From Magallana gigas (Eukaryota): a stretch of 64,000 bases of DNA. The position numbers were made by a program, and so were the translations under genes. Positions 13,818-33,852 of the stretch are shown here, one piece after another (the first letter of the stretch is position 1; the number at the start of each line of letters is the position of its first letter). The notes under the pieces are model-generated. The model made no database searches. It was not told where the DNA came from and was given only the letters and a program-made list of their open reading frames with translations. Where the stretch lies: assembly GCF_963853765.1 (NCBI RefSeq), contig NC_088860.1:32674001-32738000 (forward strand), given 5' to 3'.

Positions 13818-16258
13818 TTAGCTCTCCTCTTCATTTTGCCTCTTAAGCCAATTTCCGTACTTAGTTTCGTGGTCTTCATTCGAGTCTTTGTCGATTTCTT
13901 TCATGATGACGTCAGCCAGCTTCCAATTTTGGTCTAAATATTTAAAAAAAAAACAGCCTCATAAAACTCTGTATAAATATTTCACAGTATATAATATAGA
14001 ACAAATAAATGAATTTCAAGGCTAGAGACTCACCATCATATTTGATACATCTACATTTATCTTGCATTTCTGCAGGGGTAGCTTTGGACTGTAAAATGGC
14101 GGTAATCTGGTCCACGAGTTGGTCCCGCTGTTCGTACATTCGCTGTTTTGATAGTCCTGCTATCATCGAGACGTTCATCTGAGACAATGCATTAATCGGC
14201 GTCAACATCTCCCCTGCGAAGTAATAGTCGCACGTCTCACCCTACAACAGATATTTTAGTTTTGTAAATTAAGGAGGTTGGCACCCGAAATAATAGTCAT
14301 CATGTCAATCACCCCAAAACCACGTAGACATTAAGACGGTGGGGGGGGGGGGGGGGTTAAAATGTTCATTTATTTTATTTGTGACCAATGTTACATGCCA
14401 TTTTTTTTTTGGAAATATAGGGCCCCAATCAGAAATGATAATTTTCCTGAAATTTTTGCCAAAATTTGACATAGAAATTGATAATTTTAAGAAATAAATT
14501 AAAATTTATAGTTTGAATTATTATTTAGTTATGATTTTAAGTAAAAGTTTAAAAATTCTTGCTTTACTTGTGGCTTCAAAGGCCAGTACATAATGAACAC
14601 AACAACAGATGCTACAAAGTTTTAGAGTAAATAAATTATAACGCAAATAAATTTTTTTATAGTAATGTCATCTTTCCAAAACTTTGCATACAAATAGACA
14701 TACGTTTGATGAATCATTTAAAAGTAAAACAAGAAGGGGTCACATCTCAAAAATTTGAGATATAAAGCATGAAATAAGCTAAATTTAGGCCAAAATTGGA
14801 GTTTTTTCTTAAAGCAATATGAGCTGCATTTTTCATGTTGAATTTTTTTTAACTAAAATGTTCTTTTCTACTAAAATGACAAAAATATCATGGTTTTTAA
14901 ATTTCTGTTAGCCATATTTTTGTGAAAAACGCCGTTAAGAAGCCTTTCTTGGAGCAAAATTGAATTATTGATTTGCAATAAATTCCTTAGAAGATAAATA
15001 TTTCCTTTGACAAAAATTAATGATTTTTTCAAACCTTATTAATCATAAAAGTTTAAGTTACATGCAGACTTATCATACTAGAAGGTTTTTGCAGCAAAAT
15101 AAAATTCTAAAAAATACAGCTCACATTGTTTTAATTTCTATGAAATATAAGGTAAATATGCAAAAATATATCAATAGAAATATCAAAATATTGTTTAAAT
15201 ATGTTTTAGAACATCATGAATATATCGTTATACACAAACTATCTAGAAGTTTGGTCTGCGCTGAAAATTAGGAAGCTCTAGTTATGAAAATTGTTTGTTT
15301 CCTTTTGAAAACATTACGCCACAAAATATAGTCCCTTATTAAAGTCTGTAAAAATGTAATTTTTTTCAAAACAATTTAATTCAATATAGTTTATCTGGCA
15401 TTGTAAAATTTAAATATACTACTAGAATTATTAATATGTGATGCAGAATTTTCAGAATAGAGGTGACCCAAAATGGCTACCCAAAACCTAAGGAGCGAAC
15501 CTCTTTAAGATAATTCGCATTCACCGAGTATTTTCTCCATGATTATGAAAAAAAAGGATGCGATTGATCTGACAGTTACATAGTACCATATATGATATGT
15601 GGTCTCAAAAATATTTATTAAATACCAAAAGTTGTGAATTTTGCTGCGTGTTAATTCACCAGATTAAATGTTCATTCGATTGCAATAGTTTGCATCAATT
15701 TGATAGAAGCGTTGGTCACTAATATAGGTATTCTTGAAACTCGTATGTGATTTTTACTACATACACGAAAATTGATACCCACGAATATCAACAACACCGC
15801 AGACTTAGTACAATTATAAGACTGTGATATTCTGATAACTAAAAAACAATAAAAACTCCTTAAAATTTTTTTTAATCTTCTAAAAGTTTTCACATTTTCT
15901 GTTTTTTATCAATAATGAAAAAAACAATTAGTAAGTTATTTACCTGTATTCTGTAAAGTTTGCACGAAAACACTTTCTTGGTGGCGTTCATTTGTTTCTC
16001 TATAGGTTTAATTTCCAAAGGGGGTTGTATTCTTTCATCTATCTCATGCAGTAACGGTTTAAAATTACAACTTTCGGGGACCAACTCTAGCAAGTGTTTT
16101 GAAACTTTAAATTCTCTACTTGCTGTGAGTTTCCTAATATCATCCTGTGCCATTCTATGTTGCAGGCGTTCGTTAAAATCTTTAAAAAAATTATAAACAT
16201 TAAGATTCCTGTTTCAAGTTATCATTGTACAAATTAAGGTTTTGCACAGTAAAAACAA

Positions 16259-16340
<82 letters not shown>

Positions 16341-19300
16341 CTTTAATTTTATACATACCTGGCAACACATGCCTTAGATAATTGACATGGAATGCCCAAG
16401 CTAATCCGAACGCTACATTACCTACTGGTACCTGGGATTTCAGAGATATTACATCACCTGGGAATCATTAAAAAAGAAAAACCTCTGAATCAATGCAATG
16501 TTGCTTTTCCCCTCCCCTACTATGACAATGTGATACTGTAACAAGATAAACGTCAAAAGGTTGCTTTCTAGATTATTTACGTCTATTATAAACAGTAAAT
16601 AAATTGTTTACACATAAAACTGGTATTTAAAAAATGAAAATTGTCACATATCACACCACATGTTGCTTTCTATATGTAGATTATTTACATCTATTATAAA
16701 CAGTAAATGAATTGTTTACACATAAAACTTGTATTTAAAAAATGAAAATTGTCACATATCACACCCATTCACATATCACACCACATGACATGTTGCATCA
16801 CAATCACATTAATAGTGAAAGCGACATACCCTTAATGATTTCAAATATCCGTTCTTCAAAGGATGGTTCGTTAACGATATCGATATACGTGACCCATTGA
16901 ATGAAGTTTGGAATATATGAGCTATCAACGTCCTTCAGTAAAATGACGATTTTTAAATGATTTTTCTCTATACACTTATTTAGAAGTGCTGCCAGCCAGA
17001 ATTCGATAAACCTTTTCTTCTTAATGGTGTTATTAGATATCAAGCAACAAACCCATCTCGCTTCTTTCACTCTTTCTTCTACCACATCTGAAATATCAAA
17101 TAATCAAAGTACTGAAACGAAATGACGCCTAAATAATACACTGACATGGCGGAAGCGCCATAGTCAAAGGGTGCTTCAAAAACACACTTAATTTTATTAT
17201 TTATAACACCAACATTATTGAAATTTCAAAACGGAATTAACCTGGTGAGTCGATGGGTGGTCGAGCAATTGAACAACGAATGTTTTTGTCTTCCAAGAAA
17301 CCCCGGATGCTATTGATAGTTTTGTTATCCGGGTTCTTACTGTGAGACATACTCTTGCTTTCATGCGCATCAGAGTCGCTGTAAAGAAAGCAGACATCCT
17401 TGGAATAAGCTGGTCTGTTAGGGTCATAAAGGCCAGGGGGCTTCTCACCCTGAAAATAAAAAAAAAAATGATGAGCAAGATCGCCACCAAGCGTAGCATT
17501 CACGCGCGACATAAATGAATAGGAAATGAAATAGCAAAATGATTTATGTGATCATGAATGAAAAACTGACGATTATCTTTCAATATTATTAGTAGTAGTT
17601 TAATGGCGTATACATTACATACATTGCCATAGCATACAATTTAACAGTACTTTACAATAATTGTGGGTACAGGTGGGAGGCAGGTTATATAAAAAGGTAT
17701 AAAGTGGATGAAAAAATATCAAAAAAGACCAACAAAGCAGTAGTTATATATAAACTTAATTTACGCTTATTATCCACAAGCTTTTGTACACTAAACCAAA
17801 CTTACACACAACTAACATGCAACACATGTACAGTGCCTATGTCCATTTTTACCTTTTGATCCAGTGCTCTTTATAACAATAAATCGCTTTATATTATAAT
17901 ACCCCTTTAACCAAATGTTTTAAGGAACAAAAACCATTTTAATCCCAAGCTCTGGTAACAAAAAACTGTTTTATCCCATCATCTATGCAACCTTTTCTTT
18001 TTACATTTACATGTTTATCATGAGGCCAAAATCAACCTATCAAAGTGGATGCTACGAGTGAATCCCCTCCGTATTAAGTTGTCCAAGAGGATGAATATCA
18101 TTTAATTTTAGGGGACCGGTTCTCGTTTTTGTGGATAGACCAGGAAATGATAATTTGTGAGGTTAATGAATTATTAGCAGGTTATGAAAAAATGTGAGTA
18201 AAATTTATTCATAGTGTACGGAAGACCGTTGACGCCACCTAAAAAATATATTATCTTTTTAGCGACCGCCACAAAGATTAGGTGCCGGTCTCAAGATAAA
18301 ATTGGAGTAATTTTTACTTGTAATTTTTATATGCGCGTGGTGTGAACATTTAAACAATAAAATGCTTTCTTTCGTGATTTATTCGGGATATGAAGGTAGC
18401 GACATTGCAGAAAAAATACATAACCCGTGTTAGCGGGTTATGTAAAAAAAATTCTGCAATGATCGCTATCTTCATAACCCGAATGAATCATCAAAGAACG
18501 CATTTTATTGTTTATATTAACATCTTTCTTTTAGCTTATTTATATGTAACTGATTATCAAAGTTAGTAAAATTCACTAAATTACTGTTAATCTATAAAAG
18601 TACGTTAGCTGAAAGAAACAGCAAAATCGTCTCTTGTAAGACTAAATTTCAGTCCAACATCATCATGATTATTTCATGCAGTCCGTGATCTTTATTAGGT
18701 CGCTATAGATTTTGACCAATCGCTAAACGGGGTGTCAAATTGAATTTCAGTCCTGTCACTTTCATGTCAGTTTCAGGCGCTGTAGATTTCGACCAATCGA
18801 TAAATGGGGCGTGTAGATTTTAGTCTGGCTGTTTCTATAGAGCTATAAATTAACTATAAGTTTCCGTAAGAAATAGAGGAAATAATATTTGGTAGATGTA
18901 AATATAATCATATGGACCCCTGCAGAGATTTATGCTATTGTTGCCAAAAACTTTTGGATTAAAAAATGCACAAGGGCTTAACTCGACAGAGGGTTAAAAT
19001 CATTTATCTTTTATATACATCAATAATATTGCAATATAAAAATGTTTGCCAAAATACGAAACATATTGATACTAGAGGTATGTTGCAAAAAAAATGGTTC
19101 ACTCTGTCACAGATCAAAGATATTTTTGGCCGTTGTTAGAACTACATGTATACTCTTGGTCGAAATAAAGAGATAAATTGAAAATGAAGTTCGGAGAGGT
19201 TTTTTTAAAAATCGATTCTGTTGACATAAGTCTATTGGGTGTTTTTTTCTTACTTAGATGACATATAGACTGAAATATTATCTAATTTTGATGGCAGATC

Positions 19301-22300: not shown

Positions 22301-25300
22301 CCCACTTGTGGTGCCCCAGGGGTGTTAGAGCCACGAATTTCACTATTTAGATTCCTCTTACCATAGAGATGCCTCACACCAAAAATGGTAACAATTAGCC
22401 TTGTAGTTTTTAAGAAGAAGTTAAAAATGTAAAATTGTTAACGCACAACGGACGACGCACGACGACGGATGAAAACAGATAGCAACCTAAAAATATAATC
22501 TAACGATTTTTTAAGTAATGAGTCAAACAATCAGTATAATGCTGCTTATCTAACTAGATAAATGTGTCCTCTATGAATTGCTTTTAATATCATTCGAGCA
22601 TCTATGATTTAGAACTTTAGATAACTGTTTTCTGTAAAATGAAACATATATGTACCTTAATAATTGTAGTTTCTTTTTTTTTCTTTTTTTTCAGTCTAAA
22701 CTTATTACTTGATGTATCTACATGTAACTTTTTTAATCTCTATAATGAACATGTTTATACGTCGTAATATTAAAAATCTAAAATTTGCAGTTTGTATCAA
22801 ATATCAACAATAGTGAATTGATCATACCACCGGTTTCAGAAAGGTTTCTTCTATAGCGCTCCGGACCCCTTTGAACAAAACTCTAGACGGAGTACTTTCC
22901 TCATCTTTCCCTTCGTCTAAAATGAAGGAACGATGATACAAATGAACAAACTTCCAAACAGTTGTACGAAAAGAATGTCCAAAATCTCGACTACCAGACA
23001 ATGCCTGTTATACTCATCTTGCTTACCGTCGAACACCAAGACTTTTGCTCTTCCGAAGCATTCCTGATTTCTTGTGTGGTTTAATAGTTCTTCTGTCTTG
23101 TATTTGAACCTTTCCACTTCCGTTCTTCGCTGAAGTGGAGTTAGAAGGTTCAGAACTTCGTCTGTTATCAAGCCGAGAGCACACAGGGCGCTTGGGTACT
23201 CAGCGCAGCAGAAATATTCCTAACGGAAAAGTATCAACCTTTTTATAATTATTAATTTATGGTGGGGGAGGGGGGGGGGGTTAAGCACTACCCACATTTC
23301 CTTTCAGAAAAAAATTAGGAACCTTTTCTTTTTTTATGGAGAATTTGTTCGAGTGGTTTGTTTTTTCTCTATTCTTCTCAGAGGTGTTTCTTGTGCTTTT
23401 ATGTTAGTAGGTCTATTATCAAATTAAAAGTAGATATTTTTTGGCATTGTTCATAAAAAAATCAAAAGGCAAATTACACACTGCCAGTTTGAAACCAATC
23501 TGTATGCAATATATTATCACATTAAAATTTTCTGAATCAATTTATCTTTCTTACCTCATCTTTGCCATTTTCGTTCTTCCCGTTGACCTTGTAAATGGTC
23601 GGTGTGTATTTACGGCCATTCATTTCGATCACAACTCTACCCATATTCTGAACGTTCGGGTCTATATCCGCTATGTCTCTTTGCCCCTTTGCGCTCAGCG
23701 GACAAAGCATGAAAAATACTGTGGACATTTTGCCGAGGTTGTTTTGGAATATATCCGATTTTTGTATATATTGAGCTAGAACTACAAAAAATAATAAATA
23801 AATAAAATCATATTTTGAAAGTACATGTAGTTTAAATTTTTAACATACATGTTATTCATCAAGTTATTTAACAAGAACGTAATTTTTATAGGAAATATAA
23901 AAAATACGAAAAAAAATTAAATTATTTTGTGATAGTATATGTACTTTTTATTTTTAACATAGCCTACATGTAATTCGTCAAGTTATTTAACAAGAACGTT
24001 AATTTTATAGAAAATATAAGAACTACGAGAAAAAAAATTAATCATATTGTGATAGTACAGTCATGGAGTTTTTATTCTTAACATCTTTTGTCAAAGTTAT
24101 TTAAAGAACAACATTTTTATGAAAAGCATAAATTGTCTAGTTATTTTTGTTGGTCTTCAAATTGATATAATTATTTAAATCCACCAAGTATTATTCCCTC
24201 TATTTCTTAGGAAAACTAATAGTTAATTCATAGCTCTATAGAAACAGCCAGACTGAAATCTACACGCTCCGTTTATCGATTGGTCGACATCTACGGCAGC
24301 TGAAACTGACAAGAAAGTGACAGGATTGAATTTGACACGCCCTGTTTATCGATTGGTCGAGACCTACAACTACCTAAGAAAGATCACGGACTGCACGAAC
24401 TAACCATGGTGATGTCAGACTAAAAGTCTCACTGGAGACGATTTGGCTGTTTCTTTTAGCTAACGTACTTATGTACAGTAACAGTAATTTAGTGAATTTT
24501 ACTTACTTTTTACGCTCAATTTATTAATTAGTTAAAATAAAGATGTTAATATAAACAATAAAATGCTCACTTTGGTGATTCATGTGGGTTATGAAGGTAG
24601 CGATCATAGCAGAAAAAAATTTACATAACCCACTAACGCGGGTTATGTATTTTTTCTGCAATGTCGCTACCTTCATATCCCAAATGAATCACCAAAGTGA
24701 ACATTTTATTGTTTAATTAAAACAGAAAGACAAGACAGTTAAAGTATATGACAAATGTACCTGGTAGAATATTCTTTAAATATCCAGCGAAGTGTGACCA
24801 TGCCATTCCCACGGCAAAGTTTCCGGCCGGGAGAAGCTGGTTTAAAGATACCTCTCCTGTATAAAGCACAAATAATTCAACAACTTTATTATTATATAAC
24901 TTACACCGAAAACAAACTCACTTTTGATCTCCGTCTTATCTCGCTTTGTAATATCCCTTTTGTAGAAATAAAAAAATAAGTAGAAGAGATGAAAAGTAGT
25001 GCTGGACCTCATGCAAGTATTCATACATTGGACAACAATAAAGAATTCGGGTTCAAAAGCCGTAAAACTTGGACGAGCTCACTTTTGATCTCATTCTCGC
25101 TTTTTTTTTTAATTGGAATATATGATGGTAAAGAATGATTTGAGATAAAAAAAAAAAAAAAAAAAAAAAAAAACCCACCACCATATTATTATTTTATAAA
25201 TTCGTCTAGGTGTTATTATAGTCAGTAACTGATTTTGCTGGAAATAACTCCTTAGATGGATACATAAAAAATGGAAGAATTATCCGGCAAGGTGTGATAA

Positions 25301-25779
25301 CACGTACGTTTCAAGGTCTTGCAAACCGTCTCCATGCAGCGTTCGTGATAATTGTCGACTAGAACCATTTGCGTGGCTTGTTGAAGGAAGGGAATTTCCG
25401 GCAGCTCTTGGACGGACATTCCATCTATCAGGAGAACCATGAGGGAGAGCCTTCCCGTCTGTAGACACTGTTCCAAAGCTAGATAGGTCTCCAGGGAAAA
25501 GTCAATGTTCTTAGCACTCTCTGATAGAATTAGAAGAGTTTTCTTACTGTTCTTTATAGCCTTTGCAATGTTTTTGTACTGATGTGCCGCCATGGGCGTT
25601 GAGATGGCAGGGCGAATGAATTTTAATTTTAATTGTTCAAAATTGGATAAAATGGTTTTCTCGATTCTATATGCATCCTCTGGCTTGAAAAAGATTGTGA
25701 CGTCACTGTCTTCCATATCCTTCTTCCATTGTGAATCCTCATCACTTGACTCATCACCCGGTGTCGGCGCTTCCGCCAT
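13818..25779 (-). CDS. Tandem TIR-STING-TIR-STING protein, ~733 aa, no transmembrane region. Exons (minus strand): 25779-25308, 24856-24761, 23781-23555, 23219-23027, 22916-22828, 17449-17242, 17087-16830, 16457-16359, 16179-15944, 14241-14034, 13933-13818
   Basis: Exon lengths 472+96+227+193+89+208+258+99+236+208+116 = 2202 nt, giving one open frame; every junction is GT-AG and phase-compatible. STING motifs occur twice: NFAVGMAWSHFAGYLKNILP / FFMLCPLS..DPNV / GRKYTPTIYKV / CAEYPSAL..RRTEVERF..TEELL, and GNVAFGLAWAFHVNYLRHVLP / LLELVPESC / KKVFSCKLYRI / AGEMLTPINAL..GLSKQRMYEQ. These parallel human STING [20 protein letters not shown] / LYILLPLDC / RVYSNSIY / LEYATPLQTL..GFSREDRLEQ. Each STING domain follows a TIR-like alternating strand/helix region. 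Minus-strand AATAAA at 13458-13453. Confidence 0.88.
14273..15504. mobile_element. Putative Kolobok-like non-autonomous element with TTAA target duplication, in TIR-STING intron 9
   Basis: TTAA at 14269-14272 and 15505-15508; short imperfect TIRs GGAGGTTGGCACC vs reverse complement AGAGGTTCGCTCC; very AT-rich interior. Confidence 0.5.
16262..16337. repeat. (CT)n microsatellite about 20 nt from the exon-8 donor of TIR-STING
   Basis: Direct dinucleotide run. Confidence 0.9.
16561..16765. repeat. ~100-bp tandem duplication in TIR-STING intron 7
   Basis: AGATTATTTAC.TCTATTATAAACAGTAAAT.AATTGTTTACACATAAAACT.GTATTTAAAAAATGAAAATTGTCACATATCACACC occurs twice. Confidence 0.85.
16830..17449 (-). other. 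TIR-like domain 2 (exons 6-7)
   Basis: YSKDVCFLYSDSD..IRGFLEDKNIRCSI..VKEARWVCCLISNN..KIVILLKDVDSSYIPNFIQWVTYID matches TIR box1, betaC and the P.FL...tyID end. Confidence 0.82.
18350..18856. mobile_element. ~500-bp hairpin-ended interspersed element, copy A (TIR-STING intron 5)
   Basis: ~80-bp imperfect hairpin centred on ACATAACCCG-TGTTAG-CGGGTTATGT (~18418-18443); the whole element is the reverse complement of 24220-24716. Confidence 0.8.
20098..20938. mobile_element. PIF/Harbinger-type (Tourist-like) MITE, 841 bp
   Basis: TIRs TGCTACGTTCCCACTATC / GACAGTGGGAACTTAGCA; TAA at both flanks (20095-20097, 20939-20941), matching the TWA target duplication of PIF/Harbinger. Confidence 0.75.
21164..22490 (+). 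mobile_element. Helentron/Helitron-N-like element carrying about four ~166-bp Cg170-type satellite monomers
   Basis: 5' AACAAGAGGCC..GGTCACCTGAGT; monomers CTGAACCCCTGACCCAGGGG.CATGAATTTCACAATTTTGGTAGAGG... starting near 21650, 21819, 21986 and 22149; GACGACG/GACGG simple tract at ~22441-22470. Confidence 0.8.
23840..24130. repeat. ~120-bp tandem repeat, about 2.5 copies, TIR-STING intron 2
   Basis: TTTTTAACATA..CATGT.ATTC.TCAAGTTATTTAACAAGAACGT...TTGTGATAGTA repeated. Confidence 0.75.
24220..24716. mobile_element. ~500-bp hairpin-ended interspersed element, copy B (TIR-STING intron 2), inverted relative to copy A
   Basis: TAGTTAATTCATAGCTCTATAGAAACAGCCAGACT... is the reverse complement of ...AGTCTGGCTGTTTCTATAGAGCTATAAATTAACTA; hairpin ACATAACCC-ACTAAC-GCGGGTTATGT near 24623-24649. 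A decayed third hairpin lies at ~26415-26520. Confidence 0.8.
25308..25710 (-). other. TIR-like domain 1 (single exon) of the TIR-STING tandem
   Basis: DSDVTIFFKPED..AIKNSKKTLLILSE..FSLETYLAL..LMVLLIDGMSVQELPEIPFL follows the TIR betaA, betaC-alphaC and betaD-DD-loop pattern. Confidence 0.75.
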
Positions 25780-27112
25780 TTTGAATGGAACTGTTCTATA
25801 TAAATGAAAAAAAAATATAAAATTATCATAGATATATATACTAGTATATTATGGGTTTTTTAAAAAGATGATAAGGATTTAACTTTGTTTAATCTTCTTT
25901 TATGGCTAAGTGTAAAACAAAATCTTAAACATAGTAGTTACGTATTTTCTCTTCTATATAAAATCGGACCAAGCAGCTTTAAGAAATCAAATTGTGTTTA
26001 TACAGCTACTGACACAATTCGTTAAACAAATCGTAGACATATTTATCTATCCCAAATGATTCAAACATTATTCGAATACATTTACCAATAATAAATAAAG
26101 TTTACAGTATCAGATGGAGTAACGTCACATTTTAATGCTTTTAGGGTTATTGATTAGACCTGGATTATTTCATGGTGGACCGAAAGTTTGGGTAAATTGA
26201 GAGTAATTACTGAAATTGCTGTAACTTTCCTTACATGGTAGCATTGGCTGTTCCTTCTATACAACGTACTGATGAAAAATATAATGTACGTTTATATGAA
26301 TCATATATCATCTATGAATAATTGAGGAGAGATTTTTAGCGAGAGATACAATTTTATATTTTTTTTTGGTGGTTCATGCGGGACATGTATGCACATTCAC
26401 ATGTAGCAATCTTTGCAGAAAAAAATTATGTAATCTGCTGTTTAAGCGGGTTTTGTATATTTCGGCAGTGTGAGACTTTCATACTTCCATGAACCGCTAA
26501 AGCATTTATTTGTTTAGATATTTCCTACTTGCATTTCTTTTATCTATCAATATCGGTATTCATTTCAATTATACGAAACGCTTAAAAGCTTCGTTCTAGT
26601 TGCTGCCATTAGGCTGGTAATTAGTTAACGAGGGATTGATATCGACTCTATTCACTGCAGAAATGCATTTCACGTGTTAGACCTATACATGCACATAGAT
26701 CCCGATGGTCGGTAGCTTTGAGAAATGATGCTAAATGATTTTATGCTCAAAAGCGTCCATAAAAATAAATATCCATTACTAAAACCCATTTTATAGCGTC
26801 AATAGACATTTTCATTCCTTACTGAGCAGAACAAAACTTGATTGCAATTGAGCCGCGTACGGTTCTAAAAACGGCCAAAAAAATCTTTGAACTGTGTTTA
26901 GAGAGGTCTAAGGGGTTTTTTTCTTCATTGCAAAAGCTTTGCAATGATTGATTGATAGACAAGAAGCTTTTCCGAGCGTAATATCCGGCTGTGCGACTTA
27001 ATGATAAAAAAAATCTTCGACCGCCAAACGTAAATAGCCATGGAATGTCTACTTCTGCTGACAACTGCAACAGAAGTGAAGGACTTTTGGATGTCACCAA
27101 GTCTGAGATAAA

Positions 27113-33852
<6,740 letters not shown>

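What the first reader, a model, noticed from the sequence alone, without database searches (positions are those of the whole stretch)
25489..25491. Only TIR1 keeps a glutamate at the TIR-NADase catalytic position
Seen: TIR1 helix alphaC reads NIDFSLETYLALEQC, with E97 (GAG, 25491-25489) in the E-x-x-x-A position of the WCxxELxxA motif of NAD+-cleaving TIRs (SARM1, plant and bacterial TIRs). TIR2 reads KRFIEFWLAALLNKC; by hand alignment the equivalent position is F or W, with the nearest Glu one or two residues out of register. Established: the structurally studied oyster TIR-STING module was, as I recall, interpreted as non-catalytic. Inference: the protein may pair an enzymatic TIR with a scaffold TIR, which would preserve the bacterial-style cyclic dinucleotide to NAD+ cleavage output in an animal.
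Basis: partly seen in the sequence, partly recalled or inferred. Interest (0 to 1): 0.78.

Follow-up and report, generated by a model that had tools for sequence, protein, structure and literature searches.

The report
Oyster double TIR-STING: asymmetric catalytic glutamate
In a Pacific-oyster immune receptor made of two TIR-STING modules in one chain, only the first TIR domain keeps the glutamate that NAD-cleaving TIR enzymes need and the second has a tryptophan there; this split is real and ancient, but the glutamate alone does not show that the protein is an enzyme.

Summary
GAG at 25491-25489 (minus strand) encodes E97 of an 11-exon, 733-aa TIR1-STING1-TIR2-STING2 protein. That protein is identical to Magallana (Crassostrea) gigas XP_065924351.1 (LOC105344500).

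E97 is the second residue of predicted helix alphaC. In profile alignments it pairs with the Glu of WSKFEM in the solved oyster TIR-STING (6WT6) and of WCxYEL in TLR1/2/6/15.

In TIR2 the equivalent residue is W459. Five lines agree on this: hhalign, hmmsearch against 6WT6 and TRAM, the family MSA, the AlphaFold helix register, and a published structural call (GLU / PHE) for the mussel ortholog. E457 lies two residues out of register and is not conserved.

The split is old. TIR1 has Glu in every pteriomorph lineage sampled except a scallop (Gln). TIR2 has W or F in all two-module proteins.

- The Glu is the default state of animal TIRs.
- It is necessary but not sufficient: TLR2 has it and tested inactive, and 12 of 61 Glu-bearing animal TIRs were active.
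- The NAD+-depletion idea has already been raised for oyster TIR-STING.
- The premise that 6WT6 was read as non-catalytic could not be verified, and two citing papers contradict it.

TIR2 is almost certainly non-catalytic. I put TIR1 catalysis at about 30%.

The parts
25489..25491 (-). GAG codon of E97, the alphaC Glu of TIR1 at the TIR catalytic position
   Evidence: Translation. It pairs with the Glu of 6WT6 KFEM and of TLR WCxYEL. It is the second residue of predicted alphaC, 96-107. It is Glu in 15 of 17 family members.
25471..25473 (-). GAA/GAG codon of E103 (LALEQ), an invariant acidic residue six positions after E97
   Evidence: It is an invariant column in alignments A1 and A3. It pairs with Asp in 6WT6. 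Its role is unknown.
25308..25779 (-). Exon 1: start codon and the whole of TIR1 (residues 1-157)
   Evidence: ORF and GT donor. Pfam TIR_2 scores only 17.7 bits, below the cut-off of 28. The family profile hits 6WT6 at 3e-13.
22828..24856 (-). Exons 2-5 (24856-24761, 23781-23555, 23219-23027, 22916-22828): STING1 ligand-binding domain (residues 158-359)
   Evidence: Splice model. Pfam STING_LBD scores 76.3 bits.
16830..17449 (-). Exons 6-7 (17449-17242, 17087-16830): TIR2 (residues 360-514)
   Evidence: Splice model. Pfam TIR_2 scores 30.2 bits, above the cut-off. The family profile hits 6WT6 at 1e-5 and TRAM at 1e-4.
16996..16998 (-). TGG codon of W459, the TIR2 residue equivalent to the catalytic Glu
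   Evidence: Translation. hhalign, hmmsearch and the AlphaFold helix register all place it there. The column is W or F in all two-module lineages. The published call for the mussel ortholog is PHE.
17002..17004 (-). GAA codon of E457, the nearby TIR2 Glu two residues out of register
   Evidence: Translation. It lies just before the predicted alphaC. The column is variable: E, Q, P, G, N, S.
13818..16457 (-). Exons 8-11 (16457-16359, 16179-15944, 14241-14034, 13933-13818): STING2 ligand-binding domain and the C-terminal helix, ending at stop TAA 13820-13818
   Evidence: Splice model. Pfam STING_LBD scores 82.6 bits.

Best explanation
The codon belongs to Magallana gigas LOC105344500, a soluble TIR1-STING1-TIR2-STING2 receptor produced by an ancient tandem duplication of a TIR-STING module.

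Shown:
- TIR1 retains the ancestral alphaC glutamate (E97).
- After the duplication, TIR2 replaced it with a bulky aromatic residue (W459), and has kept W or F ever since.

Inferred:
- TIR2 is a non-catalytic, pseudo-enzyme-like or adaptor-like TIR. Its nearest solved relatives are 6WT6, TRAM and MAL. It is kept for a structural or partner-binding role.
- TIR1 is catalysis-competent at this one necessary position only.
- The most likely working model is that cyclic-dinucleotide binding to the STING domains drives assembly, which brings the TIR domains together.
- The main output is most probably TIR-TIR scaffold signalling of the TLR/adaptor kind.
- NAD+ processing by TIR1 remains a live minority possibility, at about 30%.

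The informative evolutionary event is therefore the loss in TIR2, not the retention in TIR1.
For: Identity and architecture:
- The gene model and its identity to the annotated protein.
- Both STING domains are confident, and TIR2 passes the Pfam cut-off.

E97 aligns with W459:
- hhalign.
- hmmsearch against 6WT6 and TRAM.
- AlphaFold alphaC register, 96-107 versus 458-469.
- Published structural call of GLU / PHE for mussel ortholog A0A8B6DNE6.

Age and conservation:
- The TIR1 and TIR2 clades split with 100/100 support, and the W/F-bearing TIR2s form a 100/100 clade on a long branch.
- Column 97 is Glu in oysters, pearl oysters, ark clam, mussels and Ylistrum. Column 459 is W or F in all two-module proteins.
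- The second M. gigas paralog, on contig C3, shows the same E/W split.
- TIR2 has invariant motifs of its own (RW, WVTYI), so it is under constraint.

The Glu is not diagnostic:
- TIR1's closest solved relatives after 6WT6 are TLR15/2, TLR6, TLR1, TLR2 and TLR10, which share the Glu.
- TLR2, IL-1R9 and IL-1R10 have it and were inactive.
- 12 of 61 Glu-bearing animal TIRs were active.
- Most non-TLR animal TIRs carry it.
- D93 replaces the motif Trp at -4. The BB-loop PG is lost in the oyster TIR1 (AISTPMAAHQ, against PEEHFTPG in relatives), and that stretch has pLDDT below 50.
- The scallop ortholog has Gln.
Against: - E97 is among the roughly ten most conserved TIR1 positions across hundreds of millions of years, while TIR2 lost its Glu. 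That pattern fits selection on catalysis in TIR1.
- For the paralogous solved oyster TIR-STING, the Glu is reported to lie in a NADase-type pocket. NAD+ depletion has been suggested for that protein.
- Bacterial TIR-STING is a bona fide cyclic-dinucleotide-gated NADase.
- Recent work finds cADPR synthesis even in TLR4 TIRs. 'Scaffold only' may therefore be a false dichotomy.
- No coordinates were available to check the orientation of E97.
- The alphaC regions have modest pLDDT, about 58-70.
Confidence: 0.55

Rival explanations
1. TIR1 is a cyclic-dinucleotide-activated NAD+ hydrolase or cADPR cyclase. TIR2 is its non-catalytic scaffold partner. The protein therefore keeps a bacterial-style STING to NAD+ output in an animal.
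For: - The Glu is conserved in TIR1 and lost in TIR2.
- E97 aligns with the Glu of 6WT6, which Manik et al. describe as sitting in a NADase-type pocket.
[quoted passage not shown]
- Animal TIR catalysis is more common than was thought.
Against: - The base rate is about 20%: 12 of 61 Glu-bearing animal TIRs.
- The nearest relative TLR2 is inactive although it has the Glu.
- NADase TIRs are only distant profile hits, at E about 0.005-0.03.
- The Trp at -4 is lost and the BB loop is degenerate in the oyster TIR1.
- The scallop ortholog has a natural E-to-Q change.
- TIR1 scores below the Pfam TIR cut-off.
- The metazoan TIR of TIR-STING groups with TICAM1/2-type adaptor TIRs, not with bacterial TIRs.
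Confidence: 0.3
2. Neither TIR signals or catalyses. On this reading the two-module protein is mainly a high-avidity cyclic-dinucleotide binder. It would act as a buffer, a decoy, or a regulator of the single-module and transmembrane STINGs, and the TIR domains would serve only as structural spacers or in autoinhibition.
For: - Oysters encode many STING paralogs.
- The oyster TIR1 is a divergent TIR, below the Pfam cut-off and with a degenerate BB loop.
- The two STING domains are the best-conserved and most confidently folded parts.
Against: - Both TIRs are under clear purifying selection and carry their own invariant motifs (FSLE..LALE in TIR1; RW and IPxFIxWVTYI in TIR2) across four bivalve orders.
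- A mere spacer would not be expected to conserve surface and helix-alphaC residues this well.
Confidence: 0.1
3. The alignment is wrong, and E457 of TIR2 is the functional equivalent of the catalytic Glu. In that case both TIRs would carry it and there would be no asymmetry.
For: - An ungapped alignment anchored on strand betaC (LILS / CLIS) pairs E97 with E457.
- E457-x-x-x-A461 also fits the E-x-x-x-A pattern (sequence).
Against: - hhalign, hmmsearch against 6WT6 and TRAM, the family MSA through the Ylistrum TIR2 FQMETISILEE and the AlphaFold helix register all give W459.
- Column 457 is not conserved: E, Q, P, G, N, S.
- The published structural call for the mussel ortholog is PHE.
Confidence: 0.04

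Closest known systems
Crassostrea gigas single-module TIR-STING (PDB 6WT6 / 6WT7, Morehouse et al. 2020)
   Same: It comes from the same species and has the same soluble TIR + STING ligand-binding module. It is the best solved match by sequence profile for both TIR1 (3e-13) and TIR2 (1e-5), and by Foldseek (E 1e-15). Its Glu in WSKFEM aligns with E97, and it has an Asp at the E103 position.
   Different: It has one module per chain and forms a symmetric homodimer. It is only 20-23% identical. Here two modules are fused in one chain and only the first TIR has the Glu. In TIR1 the motif Trp at -4 is replaced by D93.
Two-module TIR-STING orthologs of other bivalves, e.g. Mytilus galloprovincialis 'stimulator of interferon protein 2' (AJQ21543.1 / A0A0C5PW42, A0A8B6DNE6), Saccostrea, Pinctada, Tegillarca, Mizuhopecten
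   Same: They share the TIR-STING-TIR-STING architecture and are about 713-739 aa long. They are 33-89% identical (global identities). They show the same Glu (TIR1) against W/F (TIR2) split. For the mussel protein the split is recorded as GLU / PHE in Hurieva et al. 2026, Table S3. The architecture has also been noted for oyster in PMC11103948.
   Different: The scallop Mizuhopecten has Gln in TIR1. Ylistrum has a four-module 1,422-aa protein whose TIR2-type domains carry E or K. None of these proteins has been characterised biochemically in the literature I could search.
Bacterial TIR-STING (Sphingobacterium faecium SfSTING, PDB 7UN8)
   Same: It has the same domain logic, TIR effector plus STING sensor, and a catalytic Glu (E84) in alphaC. 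Its active site is completed by a residue from the partner TIR. That offers a precedent for a composite site in a TIR pair.
   Different: Its TIR belongs to the CAP12/Pycsar clade and has a CC-loop hairpin. The metazoan fusion arose independently, and its TIR groups with animal adaptor TIRs. Neither TIR profile gave a significant hit to it.
TLR1/2/6/10/15 TIR domains (e.g. 1FYV, 1FYW, 4OM7, 2J67, 7YLF)
   Same: They are the closest solved relatives of TIR1 after 6WT6 (E 4e-12 to 8e-8). They have a Glu in WCxYEL at the E97 column.
   Different: They belong to membrane receptors. TLR2 TIR has no detectable NADase or cADPR activity despite the Glu, which faces out of the pocket.
TRAM/TICAM2 and MAL/TIRAP adaptor TIRs (9DLG, 2M1W, 4LQD)
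   Same: They are the closest solved relatives of TIR2 after 6WT6 (E 1e-4 to 0.1). They lack the Glu: TRAM has Gln in WCNFQF, which aligns with W459.
   Different: They are stand-alone adaptors that form signalling filaments. TIR2 is embedded between two STING domains and has an aromatic residue instead of Gln.

Membership tests
NAD+-cleaving (catalytic) TIR domains (SARM1 / plant TNL / bacterial Thoeris and TIR-STING type) | TIR (flavodoxin-like) fold | tested here: met
   The TIR1 profile hits 6WT6 at 3e-13 and TLR TIRs at about 1e-12. The AlphaFold models show beta-alpha TIR topology. VIA gives Z 10.7 to the RPS4 TIR. TIR2 passes Pfam TIR_2 at 30.2 bits. TIR1 scores only 17.7 bits, below the cut-off.
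NAD+-cleaving (catalytic) TIR domains (SARM1 / plant TNL / bacterial Thoeris and TIR-STING type) | Glutamate at the alphaC catalytic position, in TIR1 | tested here: met
   E97 pairs with the Glu of 6WT6 and of TLR WCxYEL. It is the second residue of alphaC. The mussel ortholog's TIR_1 is called GLU by structural alignment.
NAD+-cleaving (catalytic) TIR domains (SARM1 / plant TNL / bacterial Thoeris and TIR-STING type) | Glutamate at the alphaC catalytic position, in TIR2 | tested here: not met
   The equivalent residue is W459. The column is W or F in all two-module lineages. The mussel ortholog's TIR_2 is called PHE.
NAD+-cleaving (catalytic) TIR domains (SARM1 / plant TNL / bacterial Thoeris and TIR-STING type) | Glu side chain pointing into a pocket formed by betaA, the AA and BB loops, alphaB and alphaC | not testable with these tools
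   Model coordinates are not exposed. pLDDT of TIR1 alphaC is about 58, and the BB-loop residues 62-64 are below 50. The pocket location is reported for paralog 6WT6. The Glu is reported to face outwards in TLR2.
NAD+-cleaving (catalytic) TIR domains (SARM1 / plant TNL / bacterial Thoeris and TIR-STING type) | Rest of the W-C-x-x-E-L-x-x-A motif (aromatic Trp four residues before the Glu) and a canonical BB loop | tested here: not met
   TIR1 reads N-I-D-F-S-L-E-T-Y-L-A. Position -4 is D93, F94 sits at -3, and A101 is kept. The BB loop reads RPAISTPMAAHQ and lacks the PG found in relatives (PEEHFTPG). That these features matter for catalysis is my recollection of SARM1 and plant TIR work, not something tested here.
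NAD+-cleaving (catalytic) TIR domains (SARM1 / plant TNL / bacterial Thoeris and TIR-STING type) | Measured NAD+ consumption or cADPR-isomer production that depends on the Glu | not testable with these tools
No TIR of this family appears among the 154 tested by Hurieva et al.: a search of their tables for FSLET and KFEMLMAV found nothing.
Metazoan soluble TIR-STING receptors (6WT6 type) | N-terminal TIR fused directly to a STING ligand-binding domain, with no transmembrane helices | tested here: met
   Pfam STING_LBD scores 76.3 and 82.6 bits, each preceded by a TIR. Foldseek's top hits are 6WT7 and 6WT6 at E 1e-15. The predicted secondary structure shows no long hydrophobic helix before either STING domain.
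Metazoan soluble TIR-STING receptors (6WT6 type) | Binding of a cyclic dinucleotide such as 2'3'-cGAMP | not testable with these tools
   Only fold similarity to ligand-bound STING structures was obtained, with TM up to 0.88 normalised to the target.

The most novel reading that the evidence does not exclude
The two STING domains of one chain pair intramolecularly into a pseudo-heterodimeric cyclic-dinucleotide pocket. This would place Glu-bearing TIR1 against Glu-less TIR2. One polypeptide would then form a single asymmetric receptor with one composite NAD+-processing active site. TIR2 would be a dedicated 'activator' half, analogous to the partner TIR that completes the SfSTING site. The protein would be an animal cyclic-dinucleotide-gated NADase or cADPR synthase built as an obligate catalytic / pseudo-catalytic TIR pair.
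Probability: 0.12. Interest if true: 0.8.

Novelty: new variant of a known kind. Interest (0 to 1): 0.42.

Why it matters
Whether animal TIR-STING proteins kept the bacterial 'sense a cyclic dinucleotide, then burn NAD+' output is still an open question. The alternative is that they switched to adaptor-type signalling. The literature I could read calls the role of the oyster TIR 'unclear' or only 'suggested'.

The two-module proteins offer a natural internal control. Two homologous TIRs sit in one chain: one with the essential Glu and one that has carried W or F in its place across at least four bivalve orders. That makes for a clean experiment (wild type, E97A, W459E, single modules). It would also be a possible example of a catalytic / pseudo-catalytic TIR pair.

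The limits are these:
- The gene and its architecture are already annotated.
- The GLU / PHE call for the mussel ortholog already sits in a published supplementary table.
- The NAD+ idea has been voiced before for oyster TIR-STING.
- A Glu at this position is common in animal TIRs and is often catalytically silent.

Tried and rejected
Structure and complex prediction:
- Complex prediction of module 1 (residues 1-359) against module 2 (360-733) gave no verdict. ipSAE was 0.00, the partner pLDDT was 44, and the alignment was not used. This is no evidence either way on intramolecular pairing.
- Single-sequence AlphaFold2 of TIR1 gave pLDDT 60.6. It is usable only for topology.
- The VIA search with that model gave RPS4 TIR at Z 10.7, followed by generic flavodoxin-like folds. 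It does not discriminate between TIR classes.
- Foldseek of the full-length model is dominated by STING hits.
- No tool exposes coordinates, so the pocket orientation of E97 could not be measured.

Homolog searches:
- Two further homologous-protein searches, one with the A3 profile and one with TIR1-STING1, returned only 6 and 3 proteins. Sampling therefore rests on 17 TIR1 and 11 TIR2 sequences plus cluster members.

Literature:
- Morehouse et al. 2020 could not be opened by DOI, PMC id or PubMed id. Whether NADase activity of 6WT6 was measured remains unverified.
- Four literature searches found no explicit assay result.

Alternatives considered and rejected:
- The betaC-anchored ungapped alignment pairs E97 with E457. 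I considered it and rejected it; see the rival explanation.
- tblastn found no second copy of the gene in the window.
Full report
**What is at the coordinates**

The window is AT-rich eukaryotic DNA (33.7% GC). On the minus strand an ORF starts at ATG 25779 and reads ...NIDFSLETYLALEQC.... Glu is its 97th residue, encoded by GAG at 25491-25489.

I rebuilt the gene from GT-AG junctions as 11 exons: 25779-25308, 24856-24761, 23781-23555, 23219-23027, 22916-22828, 17449-17242, 17087-16830, 16457-16359, 16179-15944, 14241-14034 and 13933-13818. Together they give a 733-aa protein.

The domain order is TIR1 (1-157), STING1 (158-359), TIR2 (360-514) and STING2 (515-733). Pfam STING_LBD scores 76 and 83 bits. 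TIR_2 scores 30.2 bits for TIR2, but only 17.7 bits for TIR1, which is below the cut-off.

The model is not merely plausible:
- It is residue-for-residue identical to XP_065924351.1 of Magallana (Crassostrea) gigas, gene LOC105344500.
- It is 731/733 identical to the product of a 3,069-nt Logan contig, which can only be a spliced transcript of this 12-kb gene.
- Only one copy lies in the window.

**Is E97 at the catalytic position?**

Yes, as far as sequence and predicted secondary structure can tell.
- A single-sequence phmmer search already pairs E97 with the Glu of ...SEWSKFEMLMA... in the solved C. gigas TIR-STING, 6WT6.
- A profile of 17 family TIR1 sequences (alignment A1) hits 6WT6 at 3e-13, then TLR15/2, TLR6 and TLR1 at 4e-12 to 1e-11, TLR2 at about 1e-9 and TLR10 at 8e-8. 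In each printed ungapped alignment (6WT6, TLR15/2, TLR6, TLR1) the E97 column lies on the Glu of WSKFEM or WCxYEL.
- In the AlphaFold2 model of the full protein (11-row MSA, mean pLDDT 76), alphaC of TIR1 spans 96-107, so E97 is its second residue.

There is one caveat. Of the WCxxELxxA motif only the E and A101 survive. Position -4 is D93, and F94 sits at -3.

**What does TIR2 have there?**

The sequence alone is ambiguous. TIR2 has two more residues than TIR1 between strands betaC and betaD. Anchoring on betaC pairs E97 with E457. Anchoring on betaD pairs it with W459.

Five lines of evidence settle on W459:
1. hhalign of the TIR1 and TIR2 family profiles (probability 98%) places the two extra residues in the CC loop and pairs E97 with W. 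Column confidences there are 8-9.
2. hmmsearch of the TIR2 profile pairs the conserved Trp with the Glu of KFEM in 6WT6, and with the Gln of WCNFQF in TRAM.
3. The TIR2-type domain of a four-module scallop protein (Ylistrum, P0011) still reads FQMETISILEE, like TIR1. Its Glu falls in the W column of the family alignment.
4. The AlphaFold model gives TIR2 alphaC as 458-469. That is the same 12-residue length as in TIR1, with W459 as its second residue and E457 just before the helix.
5. Independently, Hurieva et al. 2026 (bioRxiv 10.64898/2026.04.20.719644, Table S3) list Mytilus galloprovincialis A0A8B6DNE6 as TIR_1 GLU and TIR_2 PHE, from structural alignments. That protein is a cluster member, P0052, of the mussel ortholog. 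Phe is exactly what column 459 holds in mussels.

**How old and how conserved is the split?**

- A maximum-likelihood tree of 22 TIR domains separates all TIR1s from all TIR2s with 100/100 support. The duplication therefore predates the divergence of oysters, pearl oysters, ark clams, mussels and scallops.
- Column 97 is Glu everywhere except Mizuhopecten (Gln) and one 151-aa fragment (Ala).
- Column 459 is Trp in Ostreidae (both paralog groups), Pinctada (both) and Tegillarca. It is Phe in Mytilus and Mizuhopecten. Only the Ylistrum four-module protein has E or K there.
- Column 457 is E, Q, P, G, N or S.
- The second two-module gene of M. gigas, on contig C3, repeats the pattern: FSLETFLALEK in TIR1 and CMPLWMANLL in TIR2.
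- TIR2 is not decaying. It keeps invariant motifs of its own, RW before betaC and IPxFIxWVTYI.

**Does the Glu make TIR1 an enzyme?**

This is where the interpretation outruns the evidence.
- The Glu is necessary for every known NAD+-processing TIR, but it is also the default state. Hurieva et al. report that, outside the TLR and interleukin-receptor clades, most animal TIRs carry it.
- Only 12 of the 61 Glu-bearing animal TIRs they overexpressed showed activity.
- TLR2, IL-1R9 and IL-1R10 have the Glu but were inactive in vitro, and in their crystal structures the side chain faces out of the pocket. TLR2 was negative again in Hurieva's own screen.
- TLR2-family TIRs are TIR1's nearest solved relatives after 6WT6. 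SARM1/tir-1, RUN1, Roq1, AbTIR and Cat1 reach only E about 0.005-0.03.
- Culbertson and Levin place the TIR of oyster TIR-STING with animal adaptor TIRs (TICAM1/2). They argue for an independent metazoan fusion and call its role unclear.
- Within this oyster protein, the BB loop has lost the PG that relatives keep, and it is predicted with low confidence.
- The scallop ortholog has a natural Glu-to-Gln change.

On the other side:
- E97 is among the ten or so best-conserved TIR1 positions.
- Manik et al. describe the Glu of the solved oyster TIR-STING as sitting in a NADase-type pocket, and list that protein among TIRs with NADase activity.
- In bacterial SfSTING the active site around E84 is completed by D110 of the partner TIR. 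A pair with one Glu-bearing and one Glu-less TIR is therefore mechanistically conceivable.

I put NAD+ processing by TIR1 at about 30%.

I could not open Morehouse et al. 2020. The citing papers that I could read point the other way or call the role unclear. 6WT6 itself has the Glu. So the present protein is not special for 'keeping' it. The idea of a cyclic-dinucleotide to NAD+ output in oysters is already in the literature, as a suggestion.

**Best reading**

TIR2 is a conserved, non-catalytic TIR of the pseudo-enzyme or adaptor kind. Its nearest solved relatives are 6WT6, TRAM and MAL. TIR1 retains one necessary catalytic feature.

The most likely mechanism is inferred, not shown. Ligand-driven assembly of the STING domains brings the TIRs together. 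The main output would be adaptor-type TIR signalling, with NAD+ processing as a minority alternative.

An attractive but untested refinement is that STING1 and STING2 pair within one chain, which would set TIR1 against TIR2 as an obligate asymmetric pair. My one complex prediction gave no verdict.

**Novelty**

- The gene is annotated, as 'uncharacterized protein'.
- The two-TIR / two-STING architecture has been noted for oyster, and exists as 'stimulator of interferon protein 2' in Mytilus.
- The GLU / PHE calls for the mussel ortholog sit in a supplementary table.
- What I did not find discussed anywhere is the conserved catalytic-residue asymmetry itself.

It is a tidy and testable feature of a known but uncharacterised variant of TIR-STING. 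It is moderately interesting, not surprising.

Noticed in passing
window 25471-25473 (-), residue E103: A second acidic residue six positions after E97 (LALEQ/K) is invariant in 17 of 17 TIR1 sequences. It is better conserved than E97 itself, and it aligns with Asp in 6WT6 but not with anything conserved in TLRs. It may be a TIR-STING-specific functional residue.
   Followed up: partly
window 22822-22833 (-), end of exon 5: The donor that joins STING1 to TIR2 reads GTG|GTATGA. An unspliced read-through would add one Val and then stop (...LKPVV*), which would give a TIR1-STING1 short form. None of the 60 retrieved proteins ends that way.
   Followed up: partly
window about 25780-25800 (-), and upstream: Logan transcript products (P0017 and others, 745-764 aa) carry about 25 extra N-terminal residues: [20 protein letters not shown] fused to TVPFK-MAEAP. 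This implies a 5' exon spliced to an acceptor just upstream of the ATG, with an in-frame upstream start.
   Followed up: no
window 25252-25307 (-), intron 1: Many Logan contigs (P0001 with 49 members, P0021 with 6) encode a 206-aa product that reads from exon 1 into intron 1. These are unspliced RNA or genomic contigs.
   Followed up: no
G000:C3:10352853-10360394 (loci L002, L004): A second two-module TIR-STING gene of the same genome, of the Saccostrea P0007 / Pinctada P0012 type, shows the same split. TIR1 reads FSLETFLALEK and TIR2 reads CMPLWMANLL.
   Followed up: partly
G000:C8:11815613-11849757 (loci L005, L006): Two neighbouring TIR exons of TIR2 type (CYWTIVILT...IPDAIRFVTYV), next to STING-like exons, carry Glu (AFTFEIISLLES) in one copy and Gln (TLQLQLISLLES) in the other at the catalytic column. 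So TIR2-type domains that still have the Glu exist in this genome.
   Followed up: no
Hurieva et al. 2026, Table S2, Lingula unguis A0A1S3J141: A brachiopod protein is listed with one TIR (10-138, GLU 82) and two STING domains (148-339 and 511-695). The two-module architecture may therefore predate bivalves. The 340-510 stretch could be an unrecognised TIR2.
   Followed up: no
window 27113-31031 (+): Exons of a cytosolic sulfotransferase gene lie just upstream of the STING gene on the other strand. Pfam Sulfotransfer_1 scores 27.5 and 28.8 bits on two exon ORFs.
   Followed up: partly
window about 16240-16345 (-), intron after exon 8: There is a long (GA)n / (AG)n microsatellite, which translates as ERERER..., immediately after the donor of the first STING2 exon.
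   Followed up: no
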